From Bugula neritina (taxonomy: Eukaryota > Animalia > Bryozoa): a stretch of 64,000 bases of DNA. The position numbers and the translations under genes are program-made. The notes under the pieces are model-generated. The model had not been told where the DNA came from. It did no database searches and saw only the letters and a list, made by a program, of their open reading frames with translations. Where the stretch lies: assembly GCA_964035545.1 (NCBI GenBank), contig OZ037767.1:9682581-9746580 (forward strand), given 5' to 3'. Every line of letters starts with the position of its first letter. Position 1 is the stretch's first letter. Below are positions 4,852-48,900 of this stretch, piece by piece.

Positions 4852-5030
4852 CAACTGTGAGGACCCCTCATAGCAAGGGTTTTTCTAAGAGACCTATATT
4901 TTCTCTTTCACAAAGGCGAAATTATGACTTGATGCTTTTCCTAATATTACCAATAAGCTTTACTGGAATCTAACCACTGATCTTGAGTTTACAAAGCCAG
5001 TCCTCTAATTACTACACTACAGCGCTGCTC
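4852..5030 (-). mobile_element. tRNA-derived SINE copy (old, diverged)
   Basis: CTGTGAGGACCCCT..AATTATGACTTGATGCTTTTCCTAATATTACCAAT..GTTTACAAAGCCAG..GCTGCTC is colinear with the family. Confidence 0.55.
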
Positions 5031-13045: not shown

Positions 13046-13934
13046 GTAAATGCTGTAACCTACAACAGCAATATTATCTAATACTCTGTAATTAGTAAGC
13101 TATAGCACACTCTTTTCCCCCCTCTCCCCTTTCTCTCCCTCTTTCTCCCCCTCTTTCTCCCCCCCTCTCTCTCTCTCACTTTAAAATGTTATACTGTTGA
13201 CATAATACGCAATGACTCTGCGTACAAACCATCCTTGGACTTTTCTACAATTAGTGGCTGTTATTACTTGTTTTGATAACGCTATATATCACGTAGAGCA
13301 GATGGACAACGTTAATGAACTAAATAGACACACATTTGTGGAATGTATGCAGGCTATTACAGACTGATACCAGTATTACAAGTAGTTGCATGGCCTTGTA
13401 TATTAAATCTTTTTTTAAATAAAGTGCCAATTGAAGTTAGTTTATTTGAGTTAATATTTAATTTAAGTTTGCTAGAATGCAAACTTGGCATCTTACTTTA
13501 CAAACAAGCAGAGGTTTTTTGTATTATGTCATCTCGTGTTAGACAACAGACACCCCCATTGTACACATACTTCACATTTTATTGTTGCGTTCCTTTTACA
13601 TCATGAGATAACATATAGTGAATAATAATACTATAATTGTGACATGTGATATATGTGAATTGGCTTACACTGGGCGAGGAAGAAAGCTGATGTCGTGTGT
13701 AAATACTCTGTAAATGTCAAGAGATAATTACATTGGTTTAATTCCTTCTGCAGGGATTGTCAATGTCTTCATTAGCTGATGATGTAATTCATCCAATCAG
13801 ATGGGTTAATGAGATGAGTTGGTCTTATAATACACTACTCAGTTCATTGAGTGTTCAGTCCAGTGACACATACTGATTGATATACTGGAAGGTTCAACTT
13901 TTGCCAAGTGTACAGAATAACGCCTACTGGGGTG

Positions 13935-16900
13935 ATGGGCAACAATCAGATTATCATAGAATATTCACCAGCAGCAGATCTAGACGATCTTTCTCCTGGA
14001 TTTCGGACATTTTGTATCATATTTCAATCTATTTTGGCACTCAGTGGCAGTGCAGGAAACCTCTTAACAATACTCGCTGTGGTGATTTGTAAGAAGCTGA
14101 GAAGGACTCACAATGCTTATATTGCTCATCTAGCATTAGTAGACTTTTTTATTAGCAGCTTGCTCATACCTCTGAACATTGTAGGTCTGTACCGACGTAA
14201 GAGTCATGATGAGTCAGCAGCCTGCAAGGTGATAGCTGTGATATCTCTCATAGCACTCGTTCTCTCAGTCTTGAACCTGTTTATGGTTTCTTTAAACAGA
14301 TACATTCTTATCTGTAAAGGAATGTTCACCTATACAAAGATGTACAACAAAAAGACTGTTCCACTTTCCATACTCTTACTGTGGGGTTGGGCCATTCTAG
14401 TCGTGACTCCTATGTTAGCAGCAGACGGTGTGGGTTGGAGCCAGAAGACTCACTACTGCTTTTTCCGTAACTACTACTTCTTCAGTTACATTTATATAAC
14501 AGTTGGTTTGGCTCAGGCAGGAGTTGTCTTGCCTGCAGCTGCTACTTCTGTCTGCTATGTTATGATAATAAAGAAGCTGAGAACTACGGCCAGAAAGTTG
14601 GCTCCTAAGAACCCCAACAGCCTTGTTAAAGAGGTAGGTTTAACTATATTCTAGCTCTAATAACTTATCTCAAGTTGGTACTACTTTACTTCCGAAATAT
14701 TTTTACAAGAAATCAAACCATATTTTGCAACATGTCCACTTATCCACACAGAGATGCTATAACACGCTTGATCTGAAACTCCAATTTCAGATTAATAATT
14801 TTGGTTACAAGTCACTGCAGCTCAGAATCTGTTAAAAAACAGCTTTTTGCCTCAATGTAGATTAAATTAAAAATAGGGTTCATCATTAAAAGCTTTTAAA
14901 AAACAATTTAATTTAATTTTAAAGATCTTTGGAACCACTTAACGGCAAATTGAAATTGTGCCTGTTTTCTCCTTTAATTGTGCTAATTGATAGCCAGTTG
15001 AGTTGTTTAAATATCTGCTACCTAACCATATTATTATGTTAAAAAACTTGACTGGTAAAAATAGGCACCTTAAATTTTCTGGTTTTCATAATTTTAATTG
15101 TTAACTTTTCTAGTGGGAAACTAGTTTGAATATTGTATATTTTGAATTCAGCACTATATGCCTTCCATGCATCCTGTAAACCATCCTGTAAAGTATGTTT
15201 CTGTTAATAATGAATAGGCTCAGTTTTTACAGAAGTAGTAAATGTTAAGGTTTATGAGAATTTGTGAAAGCCAAGTCTATAAAAATATGTCCTAGCATTA
15301 TAAGCTAGCTACCTATAAAAAGTTGAGAAAATTCAGAGCAATATTTGGAAAATTGAGTTGTTAGAAACAGCTGAAAGCTAAATTAACAACTTTAAACTAC
15401 TTTTCTTGCAACATGCATTTATAAAGGCCAGTTTCATGTTTTTGGTATTTGTATGCTGCAGCACCTTTATTGGTGGAAATTTTTCATATTTGATTTCAAT
15501 TAAACAAGTAATGATTAACTTTGCACACTTGTAGCCTTTTTCAAAAAAATAGATAGACTTGTATTAAAAGATTTAAACTCTATTCATAGTCTTGAACTTG
15601 AACAGACCGTGCACTCGACTCCCGCTAGGCAAACTCTGTTTCCTGTTTTGTTGAAAGCTGCTAGTCATTGCTTTTAAAGGTTAAATAAGTAATCATAAGC
15701 ACAGTGTAACTCGAAGAGATTCAATACAGAGTGATAGCTATAGAGAACTTCCAATAGATTGTAAAGTTTAATTCTATATATAAAAGTCATTTCTATTGCA
15801 TTTCTTTCTAATAGTGTTGCACAGCATTGCATTGTGTACTTTCATGTAGTTAGTGTAGGGGTGGTCTAGGGGTTAGAACACTGGTTTAGTAAACACCAGG
15901 TCAATGGTTTGAATCTTAGTAGCCAGTGGTCCCTTTCTTTAGTTCTCTGAACTTTGTTAAACCAGTCATTTGATTCTTTCAATGTTCATAATTCATGATA
16001 TAAATTTAAATTTAACTTATAAAGGATATATTAAAATCAACTAGACATAAAATATGCTTTATCCAATTTATTATGGATTACTAATAACTAGACTCTAGAG
16101 CAAAGTGAGCTTTAGATGGTATTTTCAGATGGCTGAGTTAAAATACAGTCACATTAAACGAATGCATTAATCATGATGATGAAGTTAATCCTGTGAGTTG
16201 GTAGGTTTTGTTTTAACCCCATAAGTTGAAAATTAAGGTACACATTTCTATTACTCATAGCATGGATGCATGGTTAAAGTTACCGGGTTACTGTGTGCCT
16301 TACAGTATATATAGCACAATAGTTACAATATTTACAACACTCCACAATAAATATAACACTTTATAACAGCAGCAACACTCATAGTGTTTGTGCCTGTAAT
16401 TTTTCACAAAAGTAACATCTAAAGGCAATCAATTGCATAGCTCCAACAATTTAGCTGGGTTTTCATCTTCGAAGTAAAATTAACTCAGTTAAGTTTTCAT
16501 TGCTAATACACAAGTATGGCTAGTAACTGATGTGGTGAACTGGTACATGTTTTAGCCAGTGACATCTAGTGGCAGCAGTAACTACAATGTCACCGCCGCC
16601 TCGGATGACACGGCACAAGCGCCAGCAGGAAATGTAGATGATGTGGATGAAGATGACTTTGGCGAAGTTGAGCAGGTAGAAGTGAAGTCTGCAAACAGGA
16701 ACTCGTTAACTGGTATTTATTTGTATTCTTATGCACCTAGATTCAAACCATAAATCTCCAGCGTTCAAACTATCAATTTAACCGCATTATATCACAGGGG
16801 CTACAGGATTTCTAGCAACAAATGCTATTAATTATAGTGCTCTGTTTTATTTGCCGATAGCCGAGGCTTGGCTCCACTGGTTATTCTCCTATGAGTAACC

Positions 16901-17789
16901 TTCATCCAACCTAGACTTAATCACAATATTTTGGAAGACTAATCCCTTACAATTATGGCAGTCATGGAAGTGCCACAAACTTCTGCATTAGTACTTAAAT
17001 TACCACTAAAATGTTTTTACCAACCTTATACTTCTTATACAGTTTAAGTTAACCCAAACTGACCAAAAGATGTAGAAAAGTCTTCTGTTATAATATTTAT
17101 ATTATATTTTTTTGCATTGTGATTATCAGCAAGAATTTACATTATAAGTTACAACAAAAAACCATGGATGTAGTGACAGGTTAATTACAGATGTCAAACA
17201 AGCAAAAGACAAGACATTTTAGTATTAAAAAAGTGTAAGTTCTTGTAGTAACAAAATGGATTAGAAAAGTTTTCTCAAGCAGGCTAAGGACTTTTTCTCT
17301 ACTGCATGTGGCAAACGAGCAATTAATTACAACTCAATGCCTTTTCAATGGCCTTCACTGGAGATTCGAACCACTGACCTTGGGTTTACTAAGCTAGTGC
17401 CCAATTACTAGACCACCTCTGCTCCCTCTTATAGAGTAGTGTGTCAGATAAACCATCTTTGTAATATTTTAGCTAAGAGTAAAAAGAGAGAGAAGAATGA
17501 TGAGCATATTAAAAGACAAAGAGCAAAGCAAAGAGCACACAACAGAAGGGTTGGAGGGCTGATAATCATCTTCATGGTCTTCATGGTATGCTGGCTACCA
17601 ATCGCTGTCACATTCACCATAGACTATAAGCAGAGGCTACCAGGGTTGGTCTACGTCACATTAATCAGCGTGGCGTGGATCAATTCCAGCATTAACGTTT
17701 TCTTGTACGGTTACACTAACCCCACTTATAGACACGCATTCCGTTGCATCCTCAGATGCCGATTTTCAGAAATCAACAAACCCATATAA
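13935..17789 (+). CDS. Rhodopsin-family GPCR, melatonin-receptor/Moody/Tre1-like
   Basis: Exons 13935-14633, 16556-16712, 17473-17789 (phases 0,1). TM1 GN, TM2 LALVD, TM3 SLNRY (NRY variant of DRY), TM6 CWLP, TM7 NSSINVFLY, helix 8 YRHAF. First in-frame ATG (gtgATGg) lies downstream of an in-frame TGA at 13878. Confidence 0.88.
15858..15920 (+). mobile_element. SINE tRNA-like head fragment
   Basis: GTGGTCTAGGGGTTAGAACACTGGTTTAGTAAACACCAGGTCAATGGTTTGAATC matches the family head. Confidence 0.55.
17265..17426 (-). mobile_element. tRNA-derived SINE copy (diverged)
   Basis: GGCTAAGGACT..GAGCAATT..GATTCGAACCACTGACCTTGGGTTTACTAAGC..CTAGACCAC..GCTCCCT. Confidence 0.65.
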
Positions 17790-20702: not shown

Positions 20703-23700
20703 TCAACGTTTAGCTTTCATAGTCTTGTTCTGAGCCATAAGAGAGGGTGTGGAGAGGGTGTCTACAGTAACCATACCGAACAAATAAGTGAAATGAACCT
20801 TCAGATGTCTGAGGTTACAGTGACTTTGACAGATGGCAACTAACACAGTCTCTTTACCTGAAACAACAAAAGCCATTATTATCACAATAAAATATTTCCT
20901 ACAAGAGAAGAAAAAGCTATTTATATGCTATGTCTGCTAATTAATTTATTATCAGATTCACATATTTTAAGCTTAACTTCAGCTTTCAGCTACTTATTAG
21001 CTAATGAATATTACGGAAAAAAGAAGTACAAAGTTTCTTGGCCTCGCGTGTGTATAACCTCTATTTATAGATGGTTTGCAGGCCACAGTATCACCAACAT
21101 TTAACTGCTGGTTCTAGTCAATAAATACTAAGAATAGTTTAATACAAACTGACCACCCACTCAGGTGTTTTGGAATAATATAACTGGACTCAAGGTAGAC
21201 AACTCCCGATTGTTCTGGTTTTTGTAGCAATAAATGTTACCTATAAACTAGAAGTGCATCTCCTCTTCACACAGGAAGCTCTACTTTAAGAGAGAATTTA
21301 TAACCTCTGATCTCAGCAATTATCAAGTGGAAAACAAATGAAAAAGGCAATAGTTTAAAGTTTCTAGTTTAAAAGCTACATTATGTCACTCAAATGCTTC
21401 TATTTATAGCATGGAAAAAGTTATTTATTGTAGTATAGTTATAGCTGTTTATAGCTTAGTTTTACATATTTATAGCAATCTATATAGCATAGTTATAGCG
21501 TGGTTAAATTTTATCGAATGATTGAAAGAACCTTTAGTATAGCATATACCAAAGGGAAGTGGAAGTCACAGGCCTAGAATTACTAATTTTCAAGTCAAGT
21601 TTTTAAGTCAAGTCAATATCTTGAGTCATCAAACCAACTTGAAGCGATAAGCAAGTCTTTGATCAAGTGAATGTACATTGGAACATATAAAAACAGGTTA
21701 TAGCAATCGATGTATAGCAAATTTGTGTAATAAAAATAAATCAGCACTTTTAGCTTTAGCTATGTTGAAATTAATATTCATCAATCATGACTAGATGAAG
21801 ATAAGATTAAAAATAACTGCAGTTATAGTAATAATGGTAAACCATCATCTGATCAAGACAGCAATTTAATCTCTCAAATAACATTAAAAATATAATTGAT
21901 GGCATAAATAACTCATTAAAAACTGTGATTTTCACCACCTAATGCTACCAATCCATAATAAATTTAGAAATTTACCCTAATGATTGATGCAAACGTTAAA
22001 AACACTAAATTAAAGAACTTGGCATTTAGATTTGCTCAAACTTTGAAGACTTGCAGTAATTCAAGTTAATTAGTTGAGCAAGTCAAGTCAATACCGGTAC
22101 TTAAGTTTCAAGCGCCTGTGAGCAATTAAGTCACAGTGAATTGAGCACAGCTCTGATGGACAGTCTGTAGCAACATATTTAATATTATAATTGTAATTCT
22201 AATTTAAATGTAAAATATAATTCTAATGTGGATGGATTCTAAATTGTAGCCACATAGTAATGCCCACCTTTGGCAGTGATGAAAGCTCTCATGGCCAGAA
22301 GGAAGGAATGCACTTTATTATCTGATGAGAGATTATCTCCATCTCCATAGCAAAGATTAATCATGTAACATAAGTCAGCTATTACTAGTGCCACTTTGTC
22401 ATTCCTGAATTAGAAAGATTAAAAAATATATTGCACTATAAAATACTGCAACATACATTAATATAACATACATATTACAATATAATATATTACAATACAA
22501 TATATTACAATGTATATAGTTTAATATATAAGTACAATATATTATAGTACATTATATTACAATATATAAAAATATAATAAATTATATTAAAATAAAAAAA
22601 AAACTCACTATCTCTGTGAGCTAAGGACTTATTTAAATGAGGCACAGGAGCAATTATGACTGGATGCTCTTCCTAACATCGCCAATGGCCTTTGTCTGGG
22701 CTCGAACCCATGACCTATGCAAACGCTCTAACCCCTAGACCACAATTATATTTTTATATATTGTAATGTATTAGGCTAAAAGATAATATAAAATGAAATA
22801 TATTATACCAAACATTATATTTCAATTCAAAATATTATTATAATATATTGTATTATAGTAATATAATATATTATGATATAACATTTAATGGAAGCACACC
22901 AACAACAAACATCTTCACTAGGAAACAGTAATAATGTTTTTGTTTACTAGTAATCTCACAGAGTTAGTGAATAGAGCTCAGTTGGCAACACAACAACTTT
23001 AGAGACATTGCACAATAAATACAGGAAGTGTGGGTTGATGAAATCTTATGTTGAAAAGGAAATCTTTTCTTTTAGTTAATACATTGCCTTTCAATATAAC
23101 AATACAATATAATTAAAATAAAGTTCATGCCAACCACGCATCAGTATAAAAATATACACTATGCAGATATACGCTCAACCCAACATGTGGATGTTAACGT
23201 TAGCAAAGCCAGTACAACTAATAATCCTATTGACTAAGAAGCTATAGCAAAGACTATTTATTTCAATAATAATTCCACTTTAAGCAACGATGAACTACTA
23301 CCAATAATCTACTTCACCACTTAATTGGCCTATAAGAATTATTGTCAGATATATAATTTATGTGCTACTCTAACAAGATAGTTAATGGGATACATCATCT
23401 TAACAGGGGAGATAAACCCTAAACTTTACAGAACTAGACTGTTGTAAACTTATTGAAAAATAAATACATTTTACTCCATCAAATCTAAAATCAATAAACA
23501 ATAATCTATATTCTATTCTAAATAAGTTGATATTTCAAGGTTACTTACTAATTCATGTGATAAATTTGATAAATAATTTACTACTAGCAGCAATGGTGTA
23601 CAACAACCCACAACGTATCACAAGGTACGTTGGCAGCAAGAGCCATTCATATAAGACCAACTGTAATTGTCTAGTTGTACATAAATTAAAGACTGGAGTT

Positions 23701-26700
23701 TTAAAATATCTTACACGTTTTTAAAGACATTTTTAAAAGAACATTAACAGATGAAGTTAGCATGAGTGAACAGTTCTACTGAGTATGAAAATTTCATTTC
23801 AGTATTCTGCTGCTAGAATAACCTACTTTAGTTTGATATATTTTAAAACCTTCAATACTTACTGTACTGATGAAGGCAACACGTGCAGTGATTCTAAGAC
23901 TGAAGAATCTCTCAACACATCTCTTGGAGTATAAACCTACAATGATTAACAGTAATACTAGCATACGAGTCACCATAATAACAGGAGTAATACTAGCATA
24001 TGAGTCATCATAATAACATCCGTAACACTAGCATATGAGTCACCATATTAACATAAGTAATACTAGCATATGAGTCACTATATTAATATGAGTAATAATA
24101 GCATGATTCAAATATTCCACTATCCCTGACACATTTATGCAGCATTAAAATATTCATACATATCTTCTTAGCCATCACCTACACACTGTTTGAGAATTGT
24201 ATGCTCAAAAAATTTATTCTATAAGAAATTCTGTGTTCATGTTGATGATGGTTCTGGTTGGCTCTGAAGTTTGTAGTATTATATTACTAATACTATTTAT
24301 TGATGACTTTCATTGCATGCTATTTTTAACCGCTGCAACGCAAAGTTTAATCACTAAGCTGGCTTGAAAGTTTTAACATAACTGATACTAACACCTGATT
24401 CATCATAGAAACATAAGAGCTTTTATTTTCCCCACATGATTCATTTAAATTTGACTAAAAAATTCACCATTTTAAGTAGCTAGCATGAATCATAGCATAT
24501 GCTTGTATAGTGAAAATTATGTGAACTGTATACAAGCACTTAAACATGTATTAAAATACAGGAAGCTAGCTATTAACTGCAGTGAACATTATTTTTTTAA
24601 TTGACATTAATTAACAAAACAAAAGCATAAAATCAGATATCTTGTCATGCAATAATTAGAAGCCACCTAAAACCTACTCAAGCGATAAAGTACATTTACT
24701 ATATAATACAAGGTATAATAATGCGTAGTATGCTAGAGTAACTGGTGTACCATATCATTGCATAATGTAATTTCTGATTGTTTCATATTTGAAACAAGAG
24801 CAACAGAGTTAAAAGAGACAGATAACGAGACTACAAGGGTGCATGTAACATGGGAGTGCAACTCTAAAAATTAATCCTTTAGATTGGATTTATGAGTCAA
24901 AATAGTTCATCTACAAAAAGCAATATGATGCAAACTAACCATATATCACTATAAAGTTAGAAACATTGTGTAAATTTGGCAATACTTATAACATAAGTTT
25001 TTGAAAAACATGCTTCATCATAATTCAAAATTTACAACACCGACTTTCCAGGTTCTGATCAAAACCGGAAAAAACTGGTTGGTAGGGGGGGGGGGGGGGT
25101 GCAGACCAACCTAAAAGTCAAACTGTAAATACTAGTGCAGCAGTCTAAAACAAAGAGAGCAGATTAGTTGGATATACAACAATCGACTCCAAATAGCACC
25201 ATGTTCACACGCACCTTTACAGTATATCTCTGTTTTTCAAGCAGTAACTGAAGACAGCGGACAAGAAGCTGCTGCCGATCAGCCGTCACTAACGCTGTCC
25301 GAGGTAAACTGGAGTTAGTCACATCTGTGATACCGAGATAAGCTTTACACTGACTAGCAGTAGGCATGTCCAACTTCAACAAGTCCATCTCTATGAAAGC
25401 ATTCTCAAAATCACTCCAACTAATCATAGCTTTGTGAACTGAGCCCATAGCCTGAGCAGCCCAGAGAGCTGAAGACTGGGCCTTTCGAACCAGTCCCGCT
25501 ATTTGCGCTGGAGTGAAGCTATCAGTTAGTAGTGCCAACCTATATATGAAAAATACCACATCTGGTTAGAGCAAGAATGCCATCCATCTGGGCATATCGC
25601 ATAAAGTAACAGCTGGAATATGGTAGAATTAAGATGGTGAGGTGTGAAGAAGTGAGAAGAGCAGAGCATGTAGATTGATAGTTTTCAGAATAGAAACTTC
25701 AAAACCACAACTTAGTAACCATACAAGCATCATTTCTGCTCACAAGTGTTTAAAGTTTCGACCAACACAGAACAAGGCTGATGGTTGTAAAATGGTCTGG
25801 CCTGTCACCCTAAACCAATGTAGAAAAAGAACTCTATATATTGTAACAGTACCTACAAAATGTTAAAATATGTAACCCGCGTTATTAGATAGTTAGTGAA
25901 GTGTATAGTTTTTGTTTCACATAGTCAGACTAGCTGTAGTTACTAAGGCTGTAGTCGAGAGTCATCTCCTTCACATAGTCTGCTTTAAGTAGCTTACACC
26001 CAGAAGACTAGGCAATAGTTGAGGTCGACATCTTGGGAATTCTGATGGTGAGAAACAAGAAACTTTGGCAGCGTCAGCATGCATGGGTTTTGATGCAGAA
26101 GATCTGTCTGACAACCTGGGACATTAGATGGCTAGAGACACGACAAACCCATTCACATGTCAACAACCGCATGTGACTGCTGGGAGTAGACAAAACATCA
26201 CCTTTGATATGGGCGATTACTCACTTAAAATAGCAGAAAGCAGCCGATTTGACAAAATCTTGATTAGATCCGATTAGCCTATCAATCACATAAAGTTCTT
26301 TCCAGCAACAGTTAATGATGGTTAATGTTAGATAAGGGTTATTGATGGTAATCATCTTTTGCGTGACTGAGCTATAAAACCTGTTAACTTAGTTGATGTC
26401 AATCTAATGGAGTACAACTACAATGAATGGGTGAAACGAAGTGAACGTTCACTCAAGTCCTCATATTCGTAGGTTAGGTTAGGCATGGCTGAAGGTCTGT
26501 AATAATATAACAAACTTTGCATGCGTTAATTCAAAATAGAAACAAATATAAAACAAAACCATGATTTATTGCTATCTGGTGTCGGTTGTTACGCGTAGCA
26601 TCCGTCCATCACGCAGTGATTATCAACAGTGGTCCCTAGAGACTTGCAAACAGGCAGTTTGGTCGGAAATGTACATTATATAAGACTGGAGTAACTCAAC

Positions 26701-29700
26701 TATATCACGGAGGTCAGGCAGAACAAGATTAATGAAATCATTGACTCAGCGTTATTATTTGTACGGTGTAATAATTGATTAAGAGCATGTTAAAGTTTTC
26801 TTTGTAGTTATCAGTTCATAAAGTGGCTGCAAACCAAGATTTCAAATAAACTATCAAATTTATGAAAAACCCTTTGGCTTACGCTAAAAGTACAGGTGAC
26901 ATGTGCACTTGAATAGTACTCACGGAGCAGGAAAACCGTTTGAAAATTTGTTAATGGTAATCAATATGTGATTTAATCGGGAGAGATTAACTAGACATAC
27001 CAAAGTAGAGAATTAACTAGCCTGTAGCTCCACTTGCACCAACGAGTTGACAAAATGGAGTTGGGCTTGTTGAAGGGCAAGCAAAAAAATGCAGCTGCCA
27101 ACAAATTTGAACTAAATAATTATATACTAAAGAGTGACCGTAACTCATTCTACCCTTCTCAATTCCATAATATATTCATCAGTAATTAGACTTCAATGTT
27201 TACCCTTTACTGCCATGTCCTGATCGGGTGGCGGTAAAATAACTGGACTTAATTAGAGACTGAAAAGTTAACGGATGGCATATTTTTTAGTCAGTTGCTA
27301 TGGGTATTCAAAATTTTCCACAATTGCCAAATATGGTAAACCTTAGACTATCCAAATTCCTCAAATATGTAAAAAAATTACTAATACAAACTTTTAAAGT
27401 TATTGTAAATATTCCTGTATTACATACACAAGCTTAAGAGAGTGAAAGACAACGAAGTTATACAAATTCGATATAATATACCTGTTGAAATCCACGTCGT
27501 CACCTAAACGACCTGAAGCCACCGCATCTTTTAGATGAACATTAAATATCTCTTGTCGCTCCGTCTGGTCAGGTAGTGCCATCTCAATCACCACCTCAAA
27601 CCTGCATTAGGAATCAGGCAGGTGTAAGACTAACAAGTAACTTAGACTAATGCATGTCGTGTCACTTGTCAAGTCTAGCAGCAGAGTACCTTGTCTTTGA
27701 TGCCATGTAGTGGCCAAGTTTTCATGATATACAAAGTAGTAAGTAACAAGTGGGATTCTTGTAGCACCCATCTTTCAAAACCTGTCAGTAAAACCCACCT
27801 GCCAGTGCATGTCAGTAAAACCCACCTGCCAGTGCATGTCAGTAAAACTCACCTGCCAATGTACGTCAGTAAAACCCACCTGCCAATGCATGTCAGTAAA
27901 ACCCACCTGCCAGTGCATGTCAGTAAAACCCACCTGCTAATGCATGTCAGTAAAACTCACCTGCCAGTGCATGTCAGTAAAACCCACCTGCCAGGTCTCA
28001 GAAGTGCTGGTTCCAGAAGCTCAAATCTGTTAGTTAAACCAATCACCAGCAAATTATTTATCGTTCTAAAAATAAAATAAAATAAAAACACATTATTTAC
28101 GAGATGCAAGTGAAAATTTGAGTCTATCAAAATGTTGAAAATACTGTTGACATATAATTATCCCCCATGCTTCACCTGCCATTAAACTAATAGACAGCTT
28201 ATTTCATCATTTGCTTTCATGGATTGTCTCTTGTTTGTCTCTATGTGTATTTTTATCTTCAAGTGTACCTAATAATTATTACTGCATAGTTGGTCAAGTT
28301 ACAACACTTTCTACGGGCTTCTTACTTATATGCATCCATACATGGTCTCTTTACCTATCACTAAAAGTTCTAATACACCAACCTGGCAGTGTATTGTGTG
28401 CTCCCACCTAGCATACCACCAGACCAACCACAGAAAGGGGAGGTTATTACTATACAATTTGAGGAGCTGACAGAATGGTGGCTACTAGTCTAGCCTCTTA
28501 CTGCTATGAATTTCAACTACAGCAAGCTAATGCTTTACAAGGACTTCCCCAATCTGAGTGACATACTAGGATGAAGAAAGGGACGTACCGTAACCCATCC
28601 AGTTTGGTGAGCAGTTGGTTAACCAGACTATCATAGACTAAAGATCCAAGATTGTTTACATCTCGCCCTCTAGGCTTACAAATAGCATCCAACTCATCGA
28701 GCACAATCACATGGAATGGACTACAATATAATCAACACTTAATGTTCTGTGACCAACAATAATGTCAGTAGAAAAAATTGTCTAATGAAAAAGAAAATCG
28801 CCATTTAAAAATTGGATCTAACTGTCACAAGTGCTAACTGACAATGCATTAAGTGATGATGGAACATTGAGAGTCTATTTACTACCCTGTAGAGAGGAAA
28901 GTCAAGTATTCAGCTACATAGATTAAACATGAACTCTGTGAGTTAGTTAATATATCAGAGTGAATATGAACAGAGAAGAGTTAATAATATATCAAAGTGA
29001 ATATGAACAGAGATGAGTTGATGATATATCAGAGTGAATATAAACATAGCCTAAGGGAGTTACTAATATATCATAGTGAATAAAAACATAAGGGAGTTCC
29101 TAATATATCAGAGTGAATATAAACATAACTGATATACTAAAGAAGAACATTTCTATTGACCTGTTGCTCCCCAGTTCCGCCCAATCCCTTTCAGCTCTTG
29201 CAAACAAAGCCCTCAAGTTGAATTCAGATTCGCCAACATATTTGTTTAGAATTTCTGGTGAACTAACCAACTGGACCTACAAGGTGAAATAGGCAAAGCT
29301 ATACACACTACATACTATATAGTGTAAACTGATAGTTGTTGGATAGCAAACCTTCTATATAAGTTGAGTGATATTTAAATACTTTCAACAAGAAAATATC
29401 AGGTTTTCATATTCCCATGAACTTGTATACAATCATGTTTTGATAATTCCCTGAATAATTAGAATCTATAGAAACTTACAAAAAGCAGTGCCAAAAATAT
29501 TACAAATGTATTGAGTTTGTAGTATATTTGTAAATACTTTTAACCCATGAATAAGATGCTACGATATTTCAGACAGAATTAAATTTTAACATAGAAGAAG
29601 AAAGCTGGGACAACCAAGTCATTGTTTAAAAGTTTTGAGATCACAAAAAGCTGCTAAAATATACTTACAAGAATGATTCTTTTCAACAAATTCAAATAAA

Positions 29701-32700
29701 CAAGCAAAAAATATCCATTATTTTTCCATTTCCTACTCATATAACAGACAAAACGACTATAAACTAGTGCATTGGTAGAAGTTCCACGATATTTGCAGAC
29801 GGGACAGAATATTACTTACTATGAACCCTCCCAACAAGAAGTGCATTCTGTTTTACAGAACATAACATTGGTGGTTCTTAGTAACATGCTACTTGAAATG
29901 TTCTTATGCAAGTAACTACTTGCTGGAATAGTAGCTGATGAACTGATAGTATTCCTTTAGGGCAGACAACTCCATAAACTTATACAGCACCATTCAGAGA
30001 ACAACTACAATTTTTCTAACTATCGACTAGTAACCAGACAAAACAAATTTCATGTAATTTGATTAGAAGATAGAGTTGGTCTTGCAAAACTGTTTTACTT
30101 AGCAAATTATACCAGATTTGCAGCAGCTAAATACATTCTAGTGCACCAATCAGTCAGAGAGTCTTGACTAAATGGCAGAATTTTATAAAAAAATTGTTTA
30201 TTTTCGATTTATCATTGCATTTGGAAATAATTTTATAAATTATTGTGACAGTCATAGACAAAACCAGCTACACTAGTTGTTGAGAAAACTATTTAATTTA
30301 CAAGACTATTTAATTTACGGGATGTAAACCTATGCATACGATTAAATCATTAGTAAAAATTAATTAAGAAAAAAATTATTTCTACGAATTAAAAACTATT
30401 AAAACACTCAGAAGTTTCATTATTGCGGTTACATACAGTTCATTATCTAAGGATTCTAATGCTATAGATTAAAGCATTAGAATGGGAGAGATATAAGTAG
30501 GCAGACCTGATGGGCAGTATGCACTATGAAATAAGATGGTCAAGAATAACAAGACAGTGGACAGCTGGACATCAGAAATCCTAAAATATGTTTGGACATT
30601 AGCTGCTCTGGTCAGTTATAACTCTGTCTTCCAGACTGATTGATTCGAAGATTTTTCTAAAGATTATCCGGATTGACCTGAACTCTAGAGTCTAATTATT
30701 ATGAGCTTTGAACGGAACACAAGTATTTAAAACATAGAGTTGTCTTTCTTACATTTAGGAAAGACAACTCTATATTTTGAAAACAGCCTGTAATTTGTAT
30801 TTTACATTGAGGAAAGATAGCTCTACAAATTGAGATCAAATTTCAATATAACAATCTACAGCATTTTACATGGTAGGCTTTACTTGGGAAGAAACAAGAT
30901 TTTTGTGAATATTTATAACTGAATATGAAGAAAATTTGAGGTAGCTTAAATTTCAAAATGTTCACCACATCATACTCATTAGAGTTTCGACATTTCTCGA
31001 ATAGTTTTGCAGAGTGAATTGTTATACTGTAGAATTGTATAATTATACCATACAACAATTATACTGTGTGACAAGTATGCTGCATATTTATACCATATGA
31101 TAATTATGCTGTATGAGATATATTCTGGAGATGGGAACTTACGTGGCCAGCATTCATAATGGATGCCACAGTGCGAGATAGGAGAGATTTTCCTGTACCA
31201 GGTGCACCATGTAACACCAAACCTCTGACATGAGACAGTCCTAGATCTCTCAGTATGTGGGAAGGTAAAGCTATAAACATGTTACAAGGTAAGATAAATC
31301 CACCGTAGAAATCATCAAAATGCAGTCAACTAAAAACAATTCAATTCTAAAATGAGTGTGCTATAGCAATAGCAAGGCTTCGAGGAAAAAAATAGCTCGT
31401 CTTGCCACTACAGCATTTATTAGACACATCAATATTATATTTTTTCCCACATTCAGATAGAAAGAGGTACATACAGCGTATAATAGCTGAGTATACAAGC
31501 TATGTTATACACTGCAAACATACTTCGTGTAAGGAATACTTTCTTGTAGATTTCCAAGGCTTGTCTCCCCATGCCACCAACTCCATACTTCTCTAAATTG
31601 TGAAACAGCTGAGCAAAATTAGGTACAGCCGTGAAGGAAACGAGAACATGGCTCTGAGTAGTGATAGCGAGATCCTCCTTTCTACAGCAATTGGAAGATC
31701 AGGTTGTAGTTATGAATAAGATGTATTATACAGAATATGTTACACCAGCTGGAGTCTAACCAGCCAGCTTTTTGTTGCTTCAATTCAGTGTTTTTGTTTT
31801 TAGATAAAAAGAAAAATGTATACATACATGTTTTTCAATCTAAACATTGCAAAAATGGATTGTCGGTGTGAAAGTACCAACATTGGAGAAATGGTATAGT
31901 AAAAAATCTAGTATAGTATAGTATAAACACATAAGCAACCTATTTACATTTCCTAGACTCACAAGTTAACATAAACTTAAGGTAACTGAAGGTACATACA
32001 TAAAACAATCATTGAAATAGCTAGTTTAATTTTCTCAATTTTTCATAAACAATAAATGTATATGTGACTCACTCACATTTTTACTGTAAGTACACTAGAA
32101 CAGCAAATATAGACAAGGGGCAGGCATCTACGTAGCCACCAATAGAAACATAGGGTAGTGTTAAGCTACATAGATGTTCATTAGAGCTAAAAAGCAGACA
32201 ACTCCAACGTTGTTGGGTGAGACACAGAAAAAGCCTGTTAATAGCTTGTATATACCCACACCTTTATTCTCACCCGACAGCCTCAAGTCTCACATTGTAG
32301 CTGCTGGCTTGTGTGATGAGTAGCGGTGATTTAACGAGGATGGTGCACTTTATTAACCAATCATTGACAACTTTTACTTCATCACATGATGCCGCTTGAC
32401 CAATAGAAATCTCAGAAACAACTGCTTTAATGTTCATGAATCCTGAGCCATGCAAGTGCAACACTGAGCCACCCAGGGCAGAGCAATTTTGGGTGAAGGC
32501 GGGAGGGTAGGAGTCCTTGCATCCAGTTACTGCGAGACAAAAGTGAGAGAAACTGATAAAGAATTGTCTTCTCAACATTATCTATGAGTGATTATTAACT
32601 GAGATATATAAGGAGCAGCAATGGTCTAGACTCTAGAGGTTAGGCCGCTGGCTTAGTAAACACAAGGCCAGTGGTTCAAACCCCAGCAAAGGCAATTGGT

Positions 32701-35160
32701 GATGTTAAAAAGAGCATTTAGTCATAATTGCTCCTGCGACACATACGAATAAATCCTTAACCTTTTTATCAGGGGTTCTCACAGATATAGTGACTATCAA
32801 CTCCGTCACAGTGACTGAGATATGGCCACTCACCTGCTGATAACATCACATGATTTTCATGATGCAACGGGCAGCCAGCCTGAGAAACTAAAGTTACATA
32901 GTATTCACAGAGGTGCGGGGAGAGACCTTCCCTAGCCCTGAGGTGCTCGTAGGGCAAACTTTCTTCAGTGTGAATCTCAACATGACTTGGACACTACAAG
33001 CAAGAGAAGATAATTACAAATATTTCTCTCTCAGATCATTATTCATTTACTATTACTATTTTCAACAATGAACTGTAGTGGGATTATTCTAAATATTATT
33101 TCAAATATATGAAACCTGAATATGGATGGAAGTAGTTCGATTTTTGTGTGGCATAGCCTCACATGGGGAGCCCTGGCTGAGCGTCACAATAATACCATCT
33201 CCAGGGAGGTTCTGAGACTTAGGCTTAGTAGACACATGGTGCCCTATAGAAGTGGGTGCCAAACCTACAAACGGAATAAATAATAGTCCAAACAGTAGAA
33301 AACAATATAATGTAATACTTGGGTTAAATTGGGCATTTTCAAACAAAAACAACTTTTACAGTATTTTGTGTTGCTGTTTTTCCAAATCATTTTACTCATG
33401 ACAACATAATACATATCAATTCATTAGTTTAGCAATATAAGTCCATATTACCGCTAGTTGCAAAAGAATGGAACGACTTACACACCTGGTACAGTAATAC
33501 AGCCGGCCGTATGTTTCTCTGCCCCGCATTCAACACTCTGCTCTACCAGACCAAAGGAAAGTTTAGCGCCTTCCGGTTTAGAGAGTGTCGTCTCTAGCAC
33601 TTGATCACATAGCTGGGCGAGGTTATATTCAGCCCCCACCTTTGACCTATATAATGTTTCACAGGCAGACCCGGCTACCTGGGGAGAAGTCAGCACCTAC
33701 AGCATAAGAAAAGACCTGTGTGTGTCAGCAAACCGGCTCAAACAGCAAATTCAGGCAAATGTACTCAACAGAAAGTTATAGTCTATGCATGATGTTTGTC
33801 AACACATGTGTTTTTAAATCTTATGGTTTTTGTCATCTAGAACTCATATACAAGACCTGAAACTTACTATGGGCAAATAAACTTTATGCTATGGGTAAAT
33901 GTTATAACATCAAATAAAGTTCACATTTTGTAGGATTATGATAAAAAAGTTTTATTGCTCACAGGACATGTTAGATAGGTGAGTAGTATAAAGAGTAAAA
34001 CCAGTATATTAAAAAAACATTAGCTATTTCACTGAAAGCTTTTTACAGCTTTTATATTTTATTTCAGCTTTTATATTGGTAGCAGCAGTAGGAATATCAT
34101 AAATAGGTTTATTGTGCACATGACATGTTAGATAACGTTTGCTTCTCATTTGCCATTGAAGCTTTGTCACCTAGTTTTGGTGCTGAGCTTTAGGTTTCTG
34201 AATTTCTGCATGACTGTTGTGAGCTTTGACTGGCACTTGCTTTTAAATTCCTCAAACTTAGTGGAGTAATCTGAAATATTTGCATGCTACTCTGCATTGT
34301 GTTGAACCAATTTCCTTTCCCTCTGCTGGGCTATAATCGTAACGCTTGTTAAGCTCCATAAAAGAAGTCTTTATCTGGTGCAAGCCTTCAGCATACCTGT
34401 TTCCTTTGTCTGTCAACCTTGCAATCGATTCTTCCGAAATTTTTTCTTGCCTACAGCTGGGCAGACACCAACTATTCCTACAGGACTCTAACTTTCCTAT
34501 TTCTCAAGCAGATAGTGCTCACAGCACAGTTTCATCAGATCCGTTGCATGTTGACTGCAATTAGTGAGCAACTGAGCAATTGCCACCTTGCCACTGCATC
34601 TAGTTTACTGGAAACCCCCCCCCCCTCAAACGCACCGAGTCATTAAATGGCTGGAAGACAAGCTGCTGAACCGGAAGAGACGTTTGCATTAAACTTCCTG
34701 TATGCCTGACATTTGGACGAGAGCTGAGCAGAGATAGCTTTGTCCAACCGTGTTAGGTATCACACTTACAACAATCAAAACTCACTCAATCACAACTCAA
34801 AGTTAACATTCACAGCTTCTGTAAAACACCCTCCAATACACATCCCACAGCTTGGTGGTTGATCTAAGTAAATGAATATTTTACGAATTGATCTCTGTTT
34901 AGCTTAATTTCCTAATTTTGAAACGTGATATCTTTTGCATTTGTTTAATTATTTTTTGATGCAATAGCCAATAGAGGAGGTGTTGTATTTTAGCATTGTT
35001 GTTAAACTCCCTCTCTTTACAACTCAACTAGTTAACATGTCCTGTGCATAATAAAACTTATTTCTCATAATCCAATGCAGCTAGTTTTCAGCTTAAATTT
35101 TTAACTTACCATAAAAATGAAATAGTTTAAAAATCCTCTTTTCAAGTTCTCAAGAACCAT
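20703..35160 (-). CDS. NSF-like AAA+ ATPase with predicted signal peptide, MRH-type lectin domain and IPT/TIG domain (~749 aa); not canonical NSF
   Basis: Exons on - strand: 35160-35110, 33696-33486, 33264-33116, 32993-32834, 32529-32274, 31681-31524, 31270-31143, 29276-29161, 28720-28589, 28065-27988, 27601-27482, 25539-25215, 23936-23863, 22404-22268, 20857-20703; 2250 nt, all GT-AG and phase-consistent. NSF D1 motifs: YGVGGM..EIYKKVFLTR, HVRGLVLHGAPGTGKS (Walker A), PEILNKYVGESE (pore loop), VIVLDELDAICKPRG (Walker B), VNQLLTKLDG, GLTNR, ALLRPGRFEV. The first exon and last three exons are less certain than the D1 core. Confidence 0.8.
22612..22744 (-). mobile_element. tRNA-derived SINE copy (partial)
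   Basis: GGAGCAATTATGACTGGATGCTCTTCCTAACATC core plus GGGCTCGAACCC (B box on - strand) and CCCCTAGACCA. Confidence 0.78.
23950..24105. repeat. ~34-bp minisatellite, ~4.5 copies (core AGTAATACTAGCATATGAGTCACCATAATAAC)
   Basis: Directly visible; abuts the acceptor of the 23936 exon. Confidence 0.85.
27784..27993. repeat. 27-bp minisatellite, ~8 copies, containing a 5' splice donor of the NSF-like gene
   Basis: Unit AAAACCCACCTGCCAGTGCATGTCAGT; minus strand reads GCAG|GTGGGT or GCAG|GTGAGT. Confidence 0.95.
28945..29130. repeat. ~35-bp degenerate minisatellite (core AATATATCAGAGTGAATAT), ~5 copies
   Basis: Directly visible. Confidence 0.8.
32611..32800 (+). mobile_element. tRNA-derived SINE, near full length
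   Basis: GGAGCAGCAATGGTCTAG...GGTTCAAACCCC...AAGAGCATTTAGTCATAATTGCTCCTG...GGGGTTCTCACAG; fills most of the intron between the MRH and IPT exons. Confidence 0.8.
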
Positions 35161-36846: not shown

Positions 36847-44851
<8,005 letters not shown>

Positions 44852-45684
44852 AACTCAAATGATTACCTTTACTGATATTAATTATCACTTTATGTAGTTG
44901 CGTAGAAATACCTTTTTATGTAATAAGTTTGCTACAGTTTATAAATTTCCATGTTTATATTTAATTTAGTTTCCACTGAATATTCAAGTGACTGAAATTG
45001 TGTAAAGCGAATACACATAAATTTATTTATTAAAAGCAAAATTTGGAACTTCTAAGTAATCTGAAAGAAGTTGGTTACAGAAATTAGGTGGTTGAAAATT
45101 TAGATATTTTACGCAACCTTTTATAAAAACACAAAAAGTTATGAAAAAAAGAATATTATCAATTCTTGTTGTGGTTTTATATTCTGTTTGTATATCAGGA
45201 ATGATTTAACTTTTTTTTATTCTGCCAGTTTTAGTTTCTTTATATAAACTACTAAACTTTTATTTGTAGCACATAATTAGGTATTTAGGTTTAGTTAAAT
45301 AATCTGTAGTGAAGTTAAAATTAATTCTCTGATTTTAGTACAACTTTATTGTTAAAAGTATAGTGAGTGAATGATTTCAATTATTGTATACATGCTAAAA
45401 CTGTATTTTATCCACAATAAATTTATGTTGAAAAGCAGCATAAAAATTAGTAAAATTGAGATAGAACTGGTAATGCATAAAAATGACATTCAAAGATTCT
45501 ACTTGAGAATGAAAATAGCTGTACTTCAATACAAGGTAAAAGGTGATTTATAGATGAGGTAACTGGTTGGGTATACCACAGGTTAACATTTAAGCCAAGC
45601 TCAAGCAAACCACTGACTAGATAGACAATATCGAAACCTTAGTCAATTAATAAGTGCTCGCACAATACAGCAGCTGTAGTAGTA

Positions 45685-45905: not shown

Positions 45906-48900
45906 CTACTCAAGTGTAAGAGATCCAGCAGCATAGCTAACAGATGAGTCATTCTGAGATGTACATTGATTAGACTGTGCATAGTGCAGGAACTCAAAAG
46001 CATACAAGGAGGGGTGGTCTCCTGGTAAGGCCTTCAATGACTCGACTGCCTAGAAAGGTGATACAAACTTATCTTAGGGTACGCAATAGTTTTTTTTATT
46101 AAACCAGCATTAGCAGCTAAAGATCATTTGTGCACTTGTTAGGCAGCATATTCAATATTGAGACATTTTCTTATGGGTTATTATAGGCAACGTTATATAC
46201 ATATAGCAACTCAATCAGCACTTGCGAGTCAATACCATCAACAAATGCATGTTAGAATGCATGTGGTGTTATTAAATCATCAACTATTAGAAAACACAAT
46301 ATTTAAAAAATTCAGTTATAAACTCTAAGCCTAGGGCCACACTGTGCGTATTTTGGCATGCGAAAATTTAAACCGCGAGTAGCAAAGGTGTCCACTGTAT
46401 GTGTTGAGAAAACATTCGCACTTGTCGCTCAGCATTCTGAACGCAAGTGCGAATCGTCTCTGTCGTCTTCACCTACTTGGTTGGTAGTTATTTAGCGAGC
46501 CCAATTATTTTATTTTAGTGCTACATTCCAGTAAATTGCGTTTTATTGAAAGCGAGTGCGATTTAAAAATGAAAACTTCATTCATCCGGCACTTGTAGCC
46601 ATAGCAACAAGGCGAGCAGTAAAGTCAAACGCAAATATTATTAGCTAGTAGTTTTCCGATCTCACTAACGCTACAGTGGACACCTTTGCTACTTGTGGTT
46701 TTAATTTTCGCATGCAAAAATATGCACAGTGTGGCCCTAGGCTAACAGACAACCAGTTTGATGGCTAAAAATCAAGCCTAGTTCTAACTATAATAATCGA
46801 CGCTACTTAACCAAGTTTTTGAAGAGCTGTTAACACTAGTCAACACCTGCCAAGACTAGTGAATACCTGTCAAAACTTGTTGAAATCTAAGTAATTATTG
46901 TGACACTAGGCTGAGAATACTCCAGTAGATGTTATTTACAGGAGTACCATAGATGAGGGGAGACTTACATTTAGTAATACTGCAATAGGGTGTCTTCCAC
47001 ATATAGTGTTGTTAGATTCTCTGAGATATTGGTAGAACCCTTCCGAGTCCAGAGATTCTATATGTTTCATGCCCTGAAGTTGGTAAAGAAAGTGAGAGCT
47101 GCATAAACATGCAAACAGTTGAGGAACAATCCATAGGAAAAAACATGAAGCAACTAATAAGTTTATGAAAATATATATAAAAAGAAGTTAGCAAAAGCCT
47201 TCTATTTAAATTCTAAGAGGTGTTCTAAATAATTATGGTATGAATTATTACTGCACAAGATAATTGCATAGGTTTCAGACAATAACCGTGTAGAACTGTA
47301 TAGAATATGTAGAACTGTATAGAATATGCAGAACTGTATAGAATATGTAGAACTGTATATAATATGTAGAACTGTATATAATATGTAGAACTGTATAGAA
47401 TATGCAGAACTGTATAGAATATGTAGAACTGTATAGAATATGTAGAACTGTATAGAATATGTAGAACTGTATAGAACGTGTGGAACTGCATAGTATGTGT
47501 AGAACTGTATAGAATGTGTAGAACTGTATAGAATGTGTAGAACTGTATAAAATATGTAGAACTGTATAGAATATGTAGAACTGTATAGAATGTGTAGAAC
47601 TGCCTAGAACGTGTAGAACTGTATAGAATGTGTAGAACTGTATAGAACGTGTAGAACTGTATAGAATATGTAGAACTGTATAAAATGTGTAGAACTGTAT
47701 AGAATGTGTAGAACTGTTTAGAACGTGTAGAACTGTATAGAACATGTAGAACTGTATAGAATATGTAGAACTGTATAGAATGTGTAAAACTGTATAGAAT
47801 ATGTAGAACTGTATAGAATGTGTAGAACTGTATAGAACGTGTAGAACTGTATAGGATGTGTAGAACTGTATAGAACGTGTAGAACTGTATAGGATATGTA
47901 GAACTGTATAGAATGTGTAGAACAGTATAGGATATAATACATAGTGTTGGCTACTTACTGCTTTGTCCAAGTTTTCAATATGCTGAGAAATAGTGCCATT
48001 CCTTTTGTCATAATGCTTATAACTGAACCTCTTCCCTATAGTTACATAATAACATATCATAATGTATAGATCTGAGAATCACAACCATAGCAAGATAGAG
48101 CTACAAGTAACACGGTGCTAGACACATAGCAGAGTGAGAGCAATCCATAGCAACTCCTGATCCTAATGATGGAAACAAAACAAATATAAACCAAGATACC
48201 TATTTAAATATTCGACAGAAAATCCACAATACAAAAAATGCTAGCTGGCATCGAACTATTAAAAAACAAAACGCGGGAATAATCATATGCTGATACTAGT
48301 ATAGTGTTAAGATGAGTAAAGTAGATATGCAAGTTTATTGGCTAAACTAGCTTCTCATTTCCAAATAATATAATGTGAGGCAAAAGCTATGAAAACGAAA
48401 CCAGAAGAGAACACAAGTGAAGGCTTACCCCAGTGACAAAAGTCCGAAGATATCACAAAGAAGTTTTCCTTATCAGCTAAATACTTTGAGAACAGCTGAC
48501 CGTAAAACTGCTCAGCTTTCCTGTTCAGATTTCCAACCAGCACTGGTACAATGGTGAAACTACAACTGCAATCACAGGCATCCATTACCAATACACGCTA
48601 ACTACTGTTTTATTACAGTCGCCATCCCCGTGAGAAAACCCCTGATGGAAGAAGTTTTGTTAAATCAGGCTAAGGACTTATTCAGATGGGGCACAGGAGC
48701 AATTATGACTGGATGCTCTTCCTAACACCACAATGACTATAGTACAAAGCAATAACTCAACATGTACGTGGAATATGCAAGCACACCCACCCCTCCATTA
48801 CTTTAGCTATGTATGGTAAGTGCATCTCAATTGAGTGTTCATCTTCGTCTGTGGTCTGTGACATCCACTCAAAGTTGCCAGTGCTATGCAATTCTTCAAT

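What the first reader, a model, noticed from the sequence alone, without database searches (positions are those of the whole stretch)
20703..35160. Candidate secretory-pathway NSF paralogue: signal peptide + MRH lectin + IPT/TIG fused to an intact NSF-type AAA+ motor
Seen: 15 phase-consistent exons give ~749 aa. The 17-codon first exon splices in phase 0 to give MVLENLKRGFLNYFIFMVLTSPQVAG|SAC (basic n-region, hydrophobic h-region, small-residue cleavage site). Next come an 8-Cys domain ending RTTSIHIQC...CEYYVTLVSQAGCP, a 4-Cys domain GG.VLHLHGSGF..ISIG..C..V.V..IKCT, and an NSF-like D1 with intact Walker A GAPGTGKS, pore loop KYVGESE, Walker B VIVLDE, sensor 1 TNR and Arg finger RPGR. I see no TM segment between IPT and the ATPase, and there are N-glycosylation sequons (NRT, NCS, NSS, NLS). 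Established: NSF is a cytosolic hexamer whose N domain engages SNAP-SNARE complexes; MRH domains (CI/CD-MPR, OS-9, glucosidase II beta) are lumenal glycan readers; torsins are the best-known ER-lumenal AAA+ proteins. Inference: the NSF N domain has been replaced by a glycan-recognition module and the motor re-routed into the ER, Golgi or extracellular space, possibly as a glycoprotein-selective unfoldase or disaggregase. I do not recall this architecture being described.
Basis: partly seen in the sequence, partly recalled or inferred. Interest (0 to 1): 0.92.

Follow-up and report, generated by a model that had tools for sequence, protein, structure and literature searches.

The report
Secretory-pathway NSF-like motor with MRH head
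This gene encodes a relative of NSF, the cytosolic motor that pulls membrane-fusion complexes apart, but with a secretion signal and a head from the sugar-receptor (MRH) family; the same design occurs in sponges, choanoflagellates and bryozoans, and may be a second kind of AAA+ motor working inside the secretory pathway, where only torsins were known.

Summary
The gene is real. Fifteen GT-AG exons give 749 aa. Contigs of an RNA-type run join exons 1-5, 6-7 and 7-8; the 5-6 joint was not among the joints listed. The layout (signal peptide, MRH, IPT, NSF-type ATPase, no TM helix) occurs on one chain in Watersipora (47% identical), Dysidea, Amphimedon and the choanoflagellate Diaphanoeca, and partially in Geodia and Bicosta. 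All are unnamed or filed as NSF. The MRH fold is confirmed (Z 14.8 to CI-MPR domains). D1 is NSF-type but lies outside canonical NSF, which this genome encodes separately. Two corrections: D2 has lost Walker A and B in bryozoans, so only D1 is intact; and the MRH lacks the Gln of the mannose-binding QREY tetrad in all members, so lectin activity is unproven. A lumenal site is inferred from hydrophobic N-termini, conserved cysteines (six new ones in bryozoan D2) and conserved sequons within the ATPase. Most likely it is an ER or early-secretory protein-threading ATPase. Location and function are untested.

The parts
35110..35160 (-). Exon 1 coding part, aa 1-17: n- and h-region of the putative signal peptide; 5' UTR upstream with an in-frame stop
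   Evidence: joint to exon 2 seen in X1 contig
33486..33696 (-). Exon 2, aa 18-88: end of signal peptide (predicted cut near aa 26) and first half of the MRH domain; Ile84 stands at the signature Gln
33116..33264 (-). Exon 3, MRH aa 88-137, with Arg130 and sequon N129
32834..32993 (-). Exon 4, MRH aa 138-190, with Glu159 and Tyr168
32274..32529 (-). Exon 5, IPT/TIG domain aa 191-276, four Cys conserved across the family
   Evidence: Pfam TIG E 1.2e-4, over the cut-off
31524..31681 (-). Exon 6: end of IPT, N-D1 linker (double Gly) and first D1 helix; no TM segment
   Evidence: joint 6>7
31143..31270 (-). Exon 7: D1 Walker A (31208-31185)
29161..29276 (-). Exon 8: D1 pore loop 1 with aromatic residue (29243-29223)
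28589..28720 (-). Exon 9: D1 Walker B (28710-28693) and pore loop 2 with the family's two-residue insertion and Tyr
27988..28065 (-). Exon 10: sensor 1 (28034-28026) and arginine-finger motif
27482..27601 (-). Exon 11: D1 lid
25215..25539 (-). Exon 12: end of D1 lid, linker, start of degenerate D2 (P-loop lost; Cys584, Cys615, sequon N595 conserved in bryozoan-type loci)
23863..23936 (-). Exon 13: degenerate D2
   Evidence: alignment to Watersipora
22268..22404 (-). Exon 14: degenerate D2, Walker B remnant, Cys665 and Cys671
20703..20857 (-). Exon 15: end of D2 remnant (Cys708, Cys712), stop codon; no KDEL/HDEL; AATAAA about 70 nt downstream

Best explanation
An old paralogue of NSF, present since at least the choanoflagellate-animal ancestor, in which the SNAP/SNARE-binding N domain was replaced by a signal peptide, an MRH domain of CI-MPR/ATG27 type and an IPT spacer. 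Shown: one chain, the folds, intact D1 catalytic and pore residues, no TM helix. Inferred: it enters the ER, is disulfide-bonded and N-glycosylated, and forms an NSF-like hexamer with its own arginine fingers, so it needs no LAP1/LULL1-type activator. The MRH heads dock a lumenal client through a pocket that keeps Arg/Glu/Tyr but not Gln, so the ligand is a non-classical glycan or a protein surface. D1 uses lumenal ATP to thread the client, unfolding it or taking a complex or aggregate apart. D2 binds nucleotide in sponges and choanoflagellates as in NSF; in bryozoans it is a nucleotide-free, probably disulfide-braced remnant. The most likely working site is the ER or early secretory lumen, where ATP is supplied.
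For: One chain: RefSeq models in Watersipora and Dysidea, a Diaphanoeca transcriptome ORF, two intron-free Logan contigs, and two genomic loci where MRH, IPT and the start of D1 are a single open frame. MRH: all 13 PDB hits of the family profile are MRH proteins; AlphaFold2 model pLDDT 89.9; Foldseek E 7e-7 and VIA Z 14.8, rmsd 2.4 to CI-MPR domains, with unrelated folds at Z 3.7 or less. N-termini of all 7 taxa with a complete start reach KD(9) 2.1-3.4, against 7 of 135 cytosolic NSF/Cdc48 controls at 2.1 or more. All 19 Cys of the window protein are kept in Watersipora, including 6 of 6 in D2 where other residues are 43% identical; these six are absent from the NSF and sponge rows aligned. 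Sponge-type members share their own set of C-terminal Cys. Sequons inside the ATPase are conserved: N595 in three bryozoan-type loci, and an N-x-S/T before the D1 lid motif in most sponge-type members and in none of 132 canonical NSFs. The Asn-Phe-Ser that 131 of 132 canonical NSFs carry there is lost in all members checked. D1 Walker A/B, sensor 1, Arg finger and pore aromatic are kept from choanoflagellates to this genome. The ER imports ATP (PMC6113206, PMC12267056, abstracts).
Against: No experiment on location, glycosylation, oligomer state or ATPase activity. No SignalP was available, and this species' h-region is the weakest of the family (2.11). There is no KDEL/HDEL to keep it in the ER. 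The MRH is closer to post-Golgi receptors than to OS-9 (Z 14.8 against 10.2). QREY is incomplete. Watersipora has sensor-1 Asn>Glu, a pore-loop-2 deletion and loss of the MRH Arg, which points to relaxed constraint in bryozoans. Loss of the NSF sequon may simply be the ancestral Cdc48-family state (own knowledge). The NSF control set is vertebrate-heavy.
Confidence: 0.55

Rival explanations
1. Lumenal, but working after the ER: in the Golgi, endolysosome, food vacuole or secretory granule, or secreted. The MPR-like head acts in sorting or cargo release, or the motor loosens ingested or matrix proteins in these suspension feeders.
For: No ER-retention tail. Closest MRH structures are CI-MPR, CD-MPR, ELAPOR1 and ATG27-type clusters. 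All named carriers are suspension feeders (own knowledge).
Against: D1 catalytic residues are conserved across choanoflagellates, sponges and this genome, which needs a steady ATP supply. That is documented for the ER and doubtful for acidic or extracellular spaces (own knowledge). OS-9-type lectins also stay in the ER through partners without KDEL (own knowledge).
Confidence: 0.2
2. In bryozoans the protein is a decaying or non-catalytic scaffold or ligand-binding oligomer; the motor function survives only in sponges and choanoflagellates.
For: D2 has lost both Walker motifs; the bryozoan stem is long (1.15 changes per site); Watersipora has sensor-1, pore-loop-2 and MRH Arg changes.
Against: The window's D1 and that of locus L012 keep every catalytic and pore residue. 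D1 is the best-conserved part between bryozoans (55% against 43-45%). The gene is single-copy, spliced and in a conserved head-to-head position.
Confidence: 0.12
3. A cytosolic NSF-like ATPase: the N-terminus is not a working signal peptide, or a downstream start is used, and it acts on SNARE-like or other cytosolic substrates.
For: All characterised NSFs are cytosolic (PMC5070193). The h-region here is modest. The ATPase needs ATP, which is abundant in the cytosol.
Against: Hydrophobic N-termini in 7 of 7 complete members; 12 conserved Cys in two folds known from lumenal or extracellular proteins; new conserved Cys and sequons in the ATPase itself; no NSF N domain; canonical NSF is present in two copies.
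Confidence: 0.08
4. Gene-model artefact: a secreted MRH-IPT gene ends at exon 5 (reading into intron 5 gives a stop followed by AATAAA) and lies next to a separate cytosolic ATPase gene.
For: The exon 5>6 joint was not among the joints listed for this species. The donor is followed by TGA and AATAAA.
Against: The high-depth contig ends exactly at the donor and intron 5 is at DNA depth. The fusion is one ORF in transcript-type contigs and RefSeq models, and one uninterrupted genomic frame in L022 and L023. Watersipora aligns over aa 19-749 at 47%.
Confidence: 0.02

Closest known systems
NSF / Sec18 (vesicle-fusing ATPase, Cdc48 family)
   Same: D1 is 42-47% identical with all catalytic motifs; D1+D2 order; NSF-type D2 in sponge and choanoflagellate members; all top 50 Foldseek hits of the full Watersipora model are NSF/Sec18.
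   Different: No SNAP-binding N domain; signal peptide, MRH and IPT instead; two-residue pore-loop-2 insertion with Tyr; branches outside canonical NSF (97/93 support for NSF); D2 dead in bryozoans.
Torsins (ER-lumenal AAA+)
   Same: Signal peptide, lumenal AAA+, glycosylated and disulfide-containing. [quoted passage not shown]
   Different: Different AAA+ clade with a single ring and dependence on LAP1/LULL1. This family is classical-clade and two-ring in origin, keeps its own Arg finger and pore aromatic, and has MRH and IPT. Torsins are present separately in this genome (8 matches).
MRH proteins (CI-MPR, CD-MPR, ATG27, ELAPOR1, OS-9, XTP3-B, glucosidase II beta, GNPTG)
   Same: Same fold and Cys pattern; Arg, Glu and Tyr of the sugar pocket kept.
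   Different: Gln of QREY replaced by a hydrophobic residue in all members; no TM or cytosolic sorting tail; fused to an ATPase. The 2026 survey of the M6P receptor system has no mention of AAA or ATPase (10.64898/2026.10.22.760878).
Periplastid-targeted Cdc48 of algae and apicomplexans with complex plastids
   Same: A Cdc48-family ATPase routed through the ER (PMC5070193).
   Different: Keeps the Cdc48 N domain and ends in the periplastid compartment, a remnant cytosol (own knowledge); no MRH or IPT; unrelated lineages.

Membership tests
NSF/Sec18 (orthologue) | D1 groups with NSF rather than Cdc48/p97 | tested here: met
   Family plus NSF against Cdc48 D1/D2: 100/100
NSF/Sec18 (orthologue) | Falls inside the canonical NSF clade | tested here: inconclusive
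   Best tree puts it outside (NSF clade 97/93), but the AU test does not reject grouping with animal NSF (p 0.31)
NSF/Sec18 (orthologue) | CDC48_N/CDC48_2-type N domain that binds SNAP-SNARE | tested here: not met
   N-terminal part is MRH + TIG; no such Pfam hit in any member
NSF/Sec18 (orthologue) | Catalytic D1 motifs (Walker A/B, sensor 1, Arg finger, aromatic pore loop) | tested here: met
NSF/Sec18 (orthologue) | Nucleotide-binding D2 | tested here: not met
   Walker A and B lost here and in Watersipora; present in sponge and Diaphanoeca members
MRH (P-type lectin) domain | MRH beta-barrel fold with at least six conserved Cys | tested here: met
   Profile hits only to MRH proteins; Z 14.8; 8 Cys. 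The model is of the Watersipora orthologue.
MRH (mannose-binding subtype) | QREY tetrad | tested here: not met
   R130, E159, Y168 present; Gln position is Ile84 here and Ile or Leu in all members, by HMM alignment to CI-MPR repeats. Tetrad criterion as in 10.64898/2026.10.22.760878.
MRH (mannose-binding subtype) | Binds mannose or M6P glycans | not testable with these tools
   needs a glycan array
IPT/TIG | Pfam PF01833 match over the curated cut-off | tested here: met
   22.5 bits against 20.9 for exon 5; up to 33.5 bits in homologues
Torsin | Torsin-type AAA+ domain | tested here: not met
   Only a sub-threshold P-loop match; the 8 torsin matches in the genome lie elsewhere
Secretory-pathway soluble protein | Cleavable signal peptide and no TM helix | tested here: inconclusive
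   Hydropathy only; no SignalP/DeepTMHMM or experiment available

The most novel reading that the evidence does not exclude
A second, independently evolved family of AAA+ motors inside the secretory lumen: a self-activating NSF-derived threading machine with receptor-type MRH heads that unfolds or disaggregates lumenal glycoproteins. It was present in the choanoflagellate-animal ancestor (possibly earlier, as it branches outside all sampled NSFs) and was apparently lost in the model animals.
Probability: 0.4. Interest if true: 0.9.

Novelty: new variant of a known kind. Interest (0 to 1): 0.8.

Why it matters
Torsins are described as the only AAA+ ATPases of the ER lumen (PMC8889903), and NSF as mostly a singleton (PMC5070193). 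A conserved NSF paralogue built for the lumen would overturn the first statement and qualify the second. It would be a candidate protein-threading unfoldase in a compartment where I know of none (own knowledge). It gives a direct test of whether a classical AAA+ motor can run in an oxidising, glycosylating compartment. Database entries are mislabelled ('vesicle-fusing ATPase', 'peroxisomal biogenesis factor 6-like', 'uncharacterized'), which may explain why the family was missed. Choanoflagellate and sponge members are single ORFs that can be expressed.

Tried and rejected
Pfam on exons 2-4 alone, and on full homologues, did not reach an MRH-clan cut-off (best ATG27, E 0.004); the assignment comes from the family profile and the fold. 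The first word-based search with the Watersipora N-terminus returned only itself. A viral scan with the Diaphanoeca N-terminus found nothing (close relatives only). An ESM feature search of the IPT part gave no usable hit. The full-length AlphaFold model had low confidence in the N-terminal part, so I draw no conclusion on domain packing. The stronger-looking donor 4 nt downstream of exon 2 was rejected because the RNA contig uses 33486. A skipped TM exon was rejected: no homologue has one, and L022/L023 read straight through. Paper searches for the architecture and for the run accessions found nothing. Horizontal transfer was considered because of the patchy range. Intron positions shared between this gene and the sponge-type locus L017, and non-rejection of an animal clade (AU p 0.145), favour vertical descent with losses but do not prove it. 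As the operators required, the spliced window protein was never sent to a search or folding tool: it was searched exon by exon by reference, joined only inside local scripts, and database homologues stood in for full-length searches and folding.
Full report
Observation. I rebuilt the model from the minus strand: 15 exons from 35160 to 20703, all introns GT-AG, 749 aa with no internal stop. An in-frame stop lies 14 codons before the ATG. The window lies on a 32-Mb contig of a 216-Mb animal assembly. The closest named relative is the bryozoan Watersipora, so the host is probably a cheilostome bryozoan; this is inference. The gene is single-copy.

Transcript evidence. Only two runs hold the locus. 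Run X1 (RNA guessed, with DNA, from a related individual) has an 889-nt contig at depth 168 that joins exons 1 to 5 at the modelled sites, and further joints 6>7 and 7>8. The joint between IPT and ATPase (32274>31681) was not among the rows shown. The contig ends exactly at that donor, the intron lies at DNA depth and exon 6 at transcript depth, which fits splicing and not termination. Exons 9-15 were not covered by my one call.

The fusion is conserved. A phmmer search with exon 5 found a 737-aa protein, Watersipora subatra XP_067942109, which aligns with the window model over aa 19-749 at 47%. Further searches gave the same layout in Dysidea avara XP_065883638-41, Amphimedon queenslandica (A0A1X7VB22, XP_019849982), Geodia barretti (partial), the loricate choanoflagellates Diaphanoeca grandis (complete transcriptome ORF) and Bicosta minor (partial), and two intron-free Logan contigs. 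In two genomic loci, MRH, IPT and the first D1 helix form one open frame of 367-400 codons. Other loci repeat the exon order, and L017 shares several intron positions with the window gene. No named member from cnidarians, molluscs, arthropods or vertebrates appeared, but the searches were word-limited and capped at 8000 candidates, so absence is not shown.

The head. A profile of the family's first domain matches only MRH proteins in the PDB (CI-MPR E 2e-7, XTP3-B 3e-7, OS-9, glucosidase II beta). An AlphaFold2 model of the Watersipora domain (pLDDT 89.9) matches CI-MPR and CD-MPR domains (Foldseek E 7e-7; VIA Z 14.8, rmsd 2.4 over 131 residues; unrelated folds at Z 3.7 or less) and ATG27/CIMR clusters. 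Of the QREY tetrad used to predict mannose binding (10.64898/2026.10.22.760878), Glu and Tyr are invariant and Arg is kept in all but Watersipora. The Gln position holds Ile or Leu throughout. In bryozoans a sequon (N129) sits beside the Arg. The pocket is therefore conserved but is not a classical mannose site. The next domain is IPT/TIG with four invariant Cys.

The motor. D1 groups with NSF against Cdc48 (100/100). In the best tree the family (89/70) is sister to all sampled canonical NSFs (97/93). A position next to animal NSF is not rejected (AU p 0.31), so its age beyond Choanozoa is open. The genome's canonical NSF is elsewhere, as a tandem pair on C5 with different D1 intron positions. 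Walker A/B, sensor 1, Arg finger and the pore aromatic are conserved, and pore loop 2 carries a family-specific insertion with Tyr. D2 has NSF-like Walker motifs in sponges and Diaphanoeca but has lost them here and in Watersipora. Watersipora also changed sensor 1 and shortened pore loop 2.

Is it lumenal? All seven taxa with a complete start have a hydrophobic N-terminus (KD 2.1-3.4; 7 of 135 cytosolic controls reach 2.1), and none has a TM helix or KDEL. The ATPase itself shows marks of an oxidising, glycosylating site. Six Cys in the bryozoan D2 remnant are all conserved at 43% background identity and are absent from NSF. Sponge-type members share another Cys set. A sequon at N595 is kept in three bryozoan-type loci. 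Sponge-type members keep an N-x-S/T before the lid motif that none of 132 NSFs has, and all members lack the Asn-Phe-Ser that 131 of 132 NSFs have there. Each sign is indirect; together they make a lumenal protein likely (about 0.85).

Mechanism. Shown: one chain with MRH, IPT and a catalytically complete NSF-type D1. Inferred from NSF (PMC5070193): a hexamer in which D1 threads a client and D2 supports the ring. Inferred here: the MRH heads replace the N domain as client dock, and the work is done in the ER or early secretory lumen, which imports ATP (PMC6113206). I give this reading 0.55; a post-ER or secreted role 0.2; a non-catalytic role in bryozoans 0.12; a cytosolic protein 0.08; a gene-model artefact 0.02.

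Comparison and novelty. It works like NSF in its motor, but it is not filed as an NSF orthologue because the N domain is absent. It resembles torsins in location only; torsins are called the only AAA+ ATPases of the ER lumen (PMC8889903) and occur separately in this genome. In keyword look-ups, the family survey of Cdc48/NSF (PMC5070193) mentions no sponge sequence and no such NSF branch; its ER-routed Cdc48 belongs to complex plastids. Verdict: a real, old, undescribed architecture built from known parts, with a probably new compartment for an NSF-type motor. The lectin and unfoldase claims are untested.

Noticed in passing
G000:C139 (L010:2727-4226); also C21, C34, C92, C96, C115, C194, C66: Small contigs carry intron-free AAA genes with in-frame TAA/TAG. 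In the C139 NSF the stops fall on conserved Glu positions (Walker B, lid motif), which suggests a cobiont with the peritrich-ciliate code (TAR = Glu) in the assembly.
   Followed up: partly
G000:C5:1863000-1882000 (L006-L008): Canonical NSF is a recent tandem pair (about 88-94% DNA identity); the second copy has His in place of the pore-loop Tyr.
   Followed up: partly
window 36856-44900, + strand: A double-zinc-ribbon/ankyrin gene (DZANK1-like) starts head-to-head 1.7 kb from the ATG; the same arrangement is in locus L011 from another animal, suggesting a shared promoter.
   Followed up: partly
G000:C6:8505304-8529466 and C7:3632176-3668600: Eight torsin matches in two tandem clusters, an expansion.
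   Followed up: no
window 1-9500, + strand: Two LRR receptor genes in tandem, Toll-like in appearance (808-aa open frame at 6213-8636).
   Followed up: no
window 13881-17786 (+), about 46900-49700 (-), about 55800-61800 (-): Other neighbours: a rhodopsin-family GPCR, a MEMO1-like gene and an MGAT1 (GNT-I) gene.
   Followed up: no
window 32630-32800 (intron 4): A very high-copy short repeat (summed depth 24,000-64,000), SINE-like; similar sequence appears near 22750-22610.
   Followed up: no
window 27986-27780 (intron 10): Tandem repeat of about 27 nt whose unit includes the exon-10 end and donor sequence, giving several decoy donor sites.
   Followed up: no
window 34261-34503, - strand (intron 1): An 81-codon open stretch that looks by eye like a transposon Myb/SANT fragment; no Pfam hit.
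   Followed up: partly
L016/L017: The sponge-type homologue lies head-to-head with a GIPC-like PDZ gene; the host could not be named.
   Followed up: no
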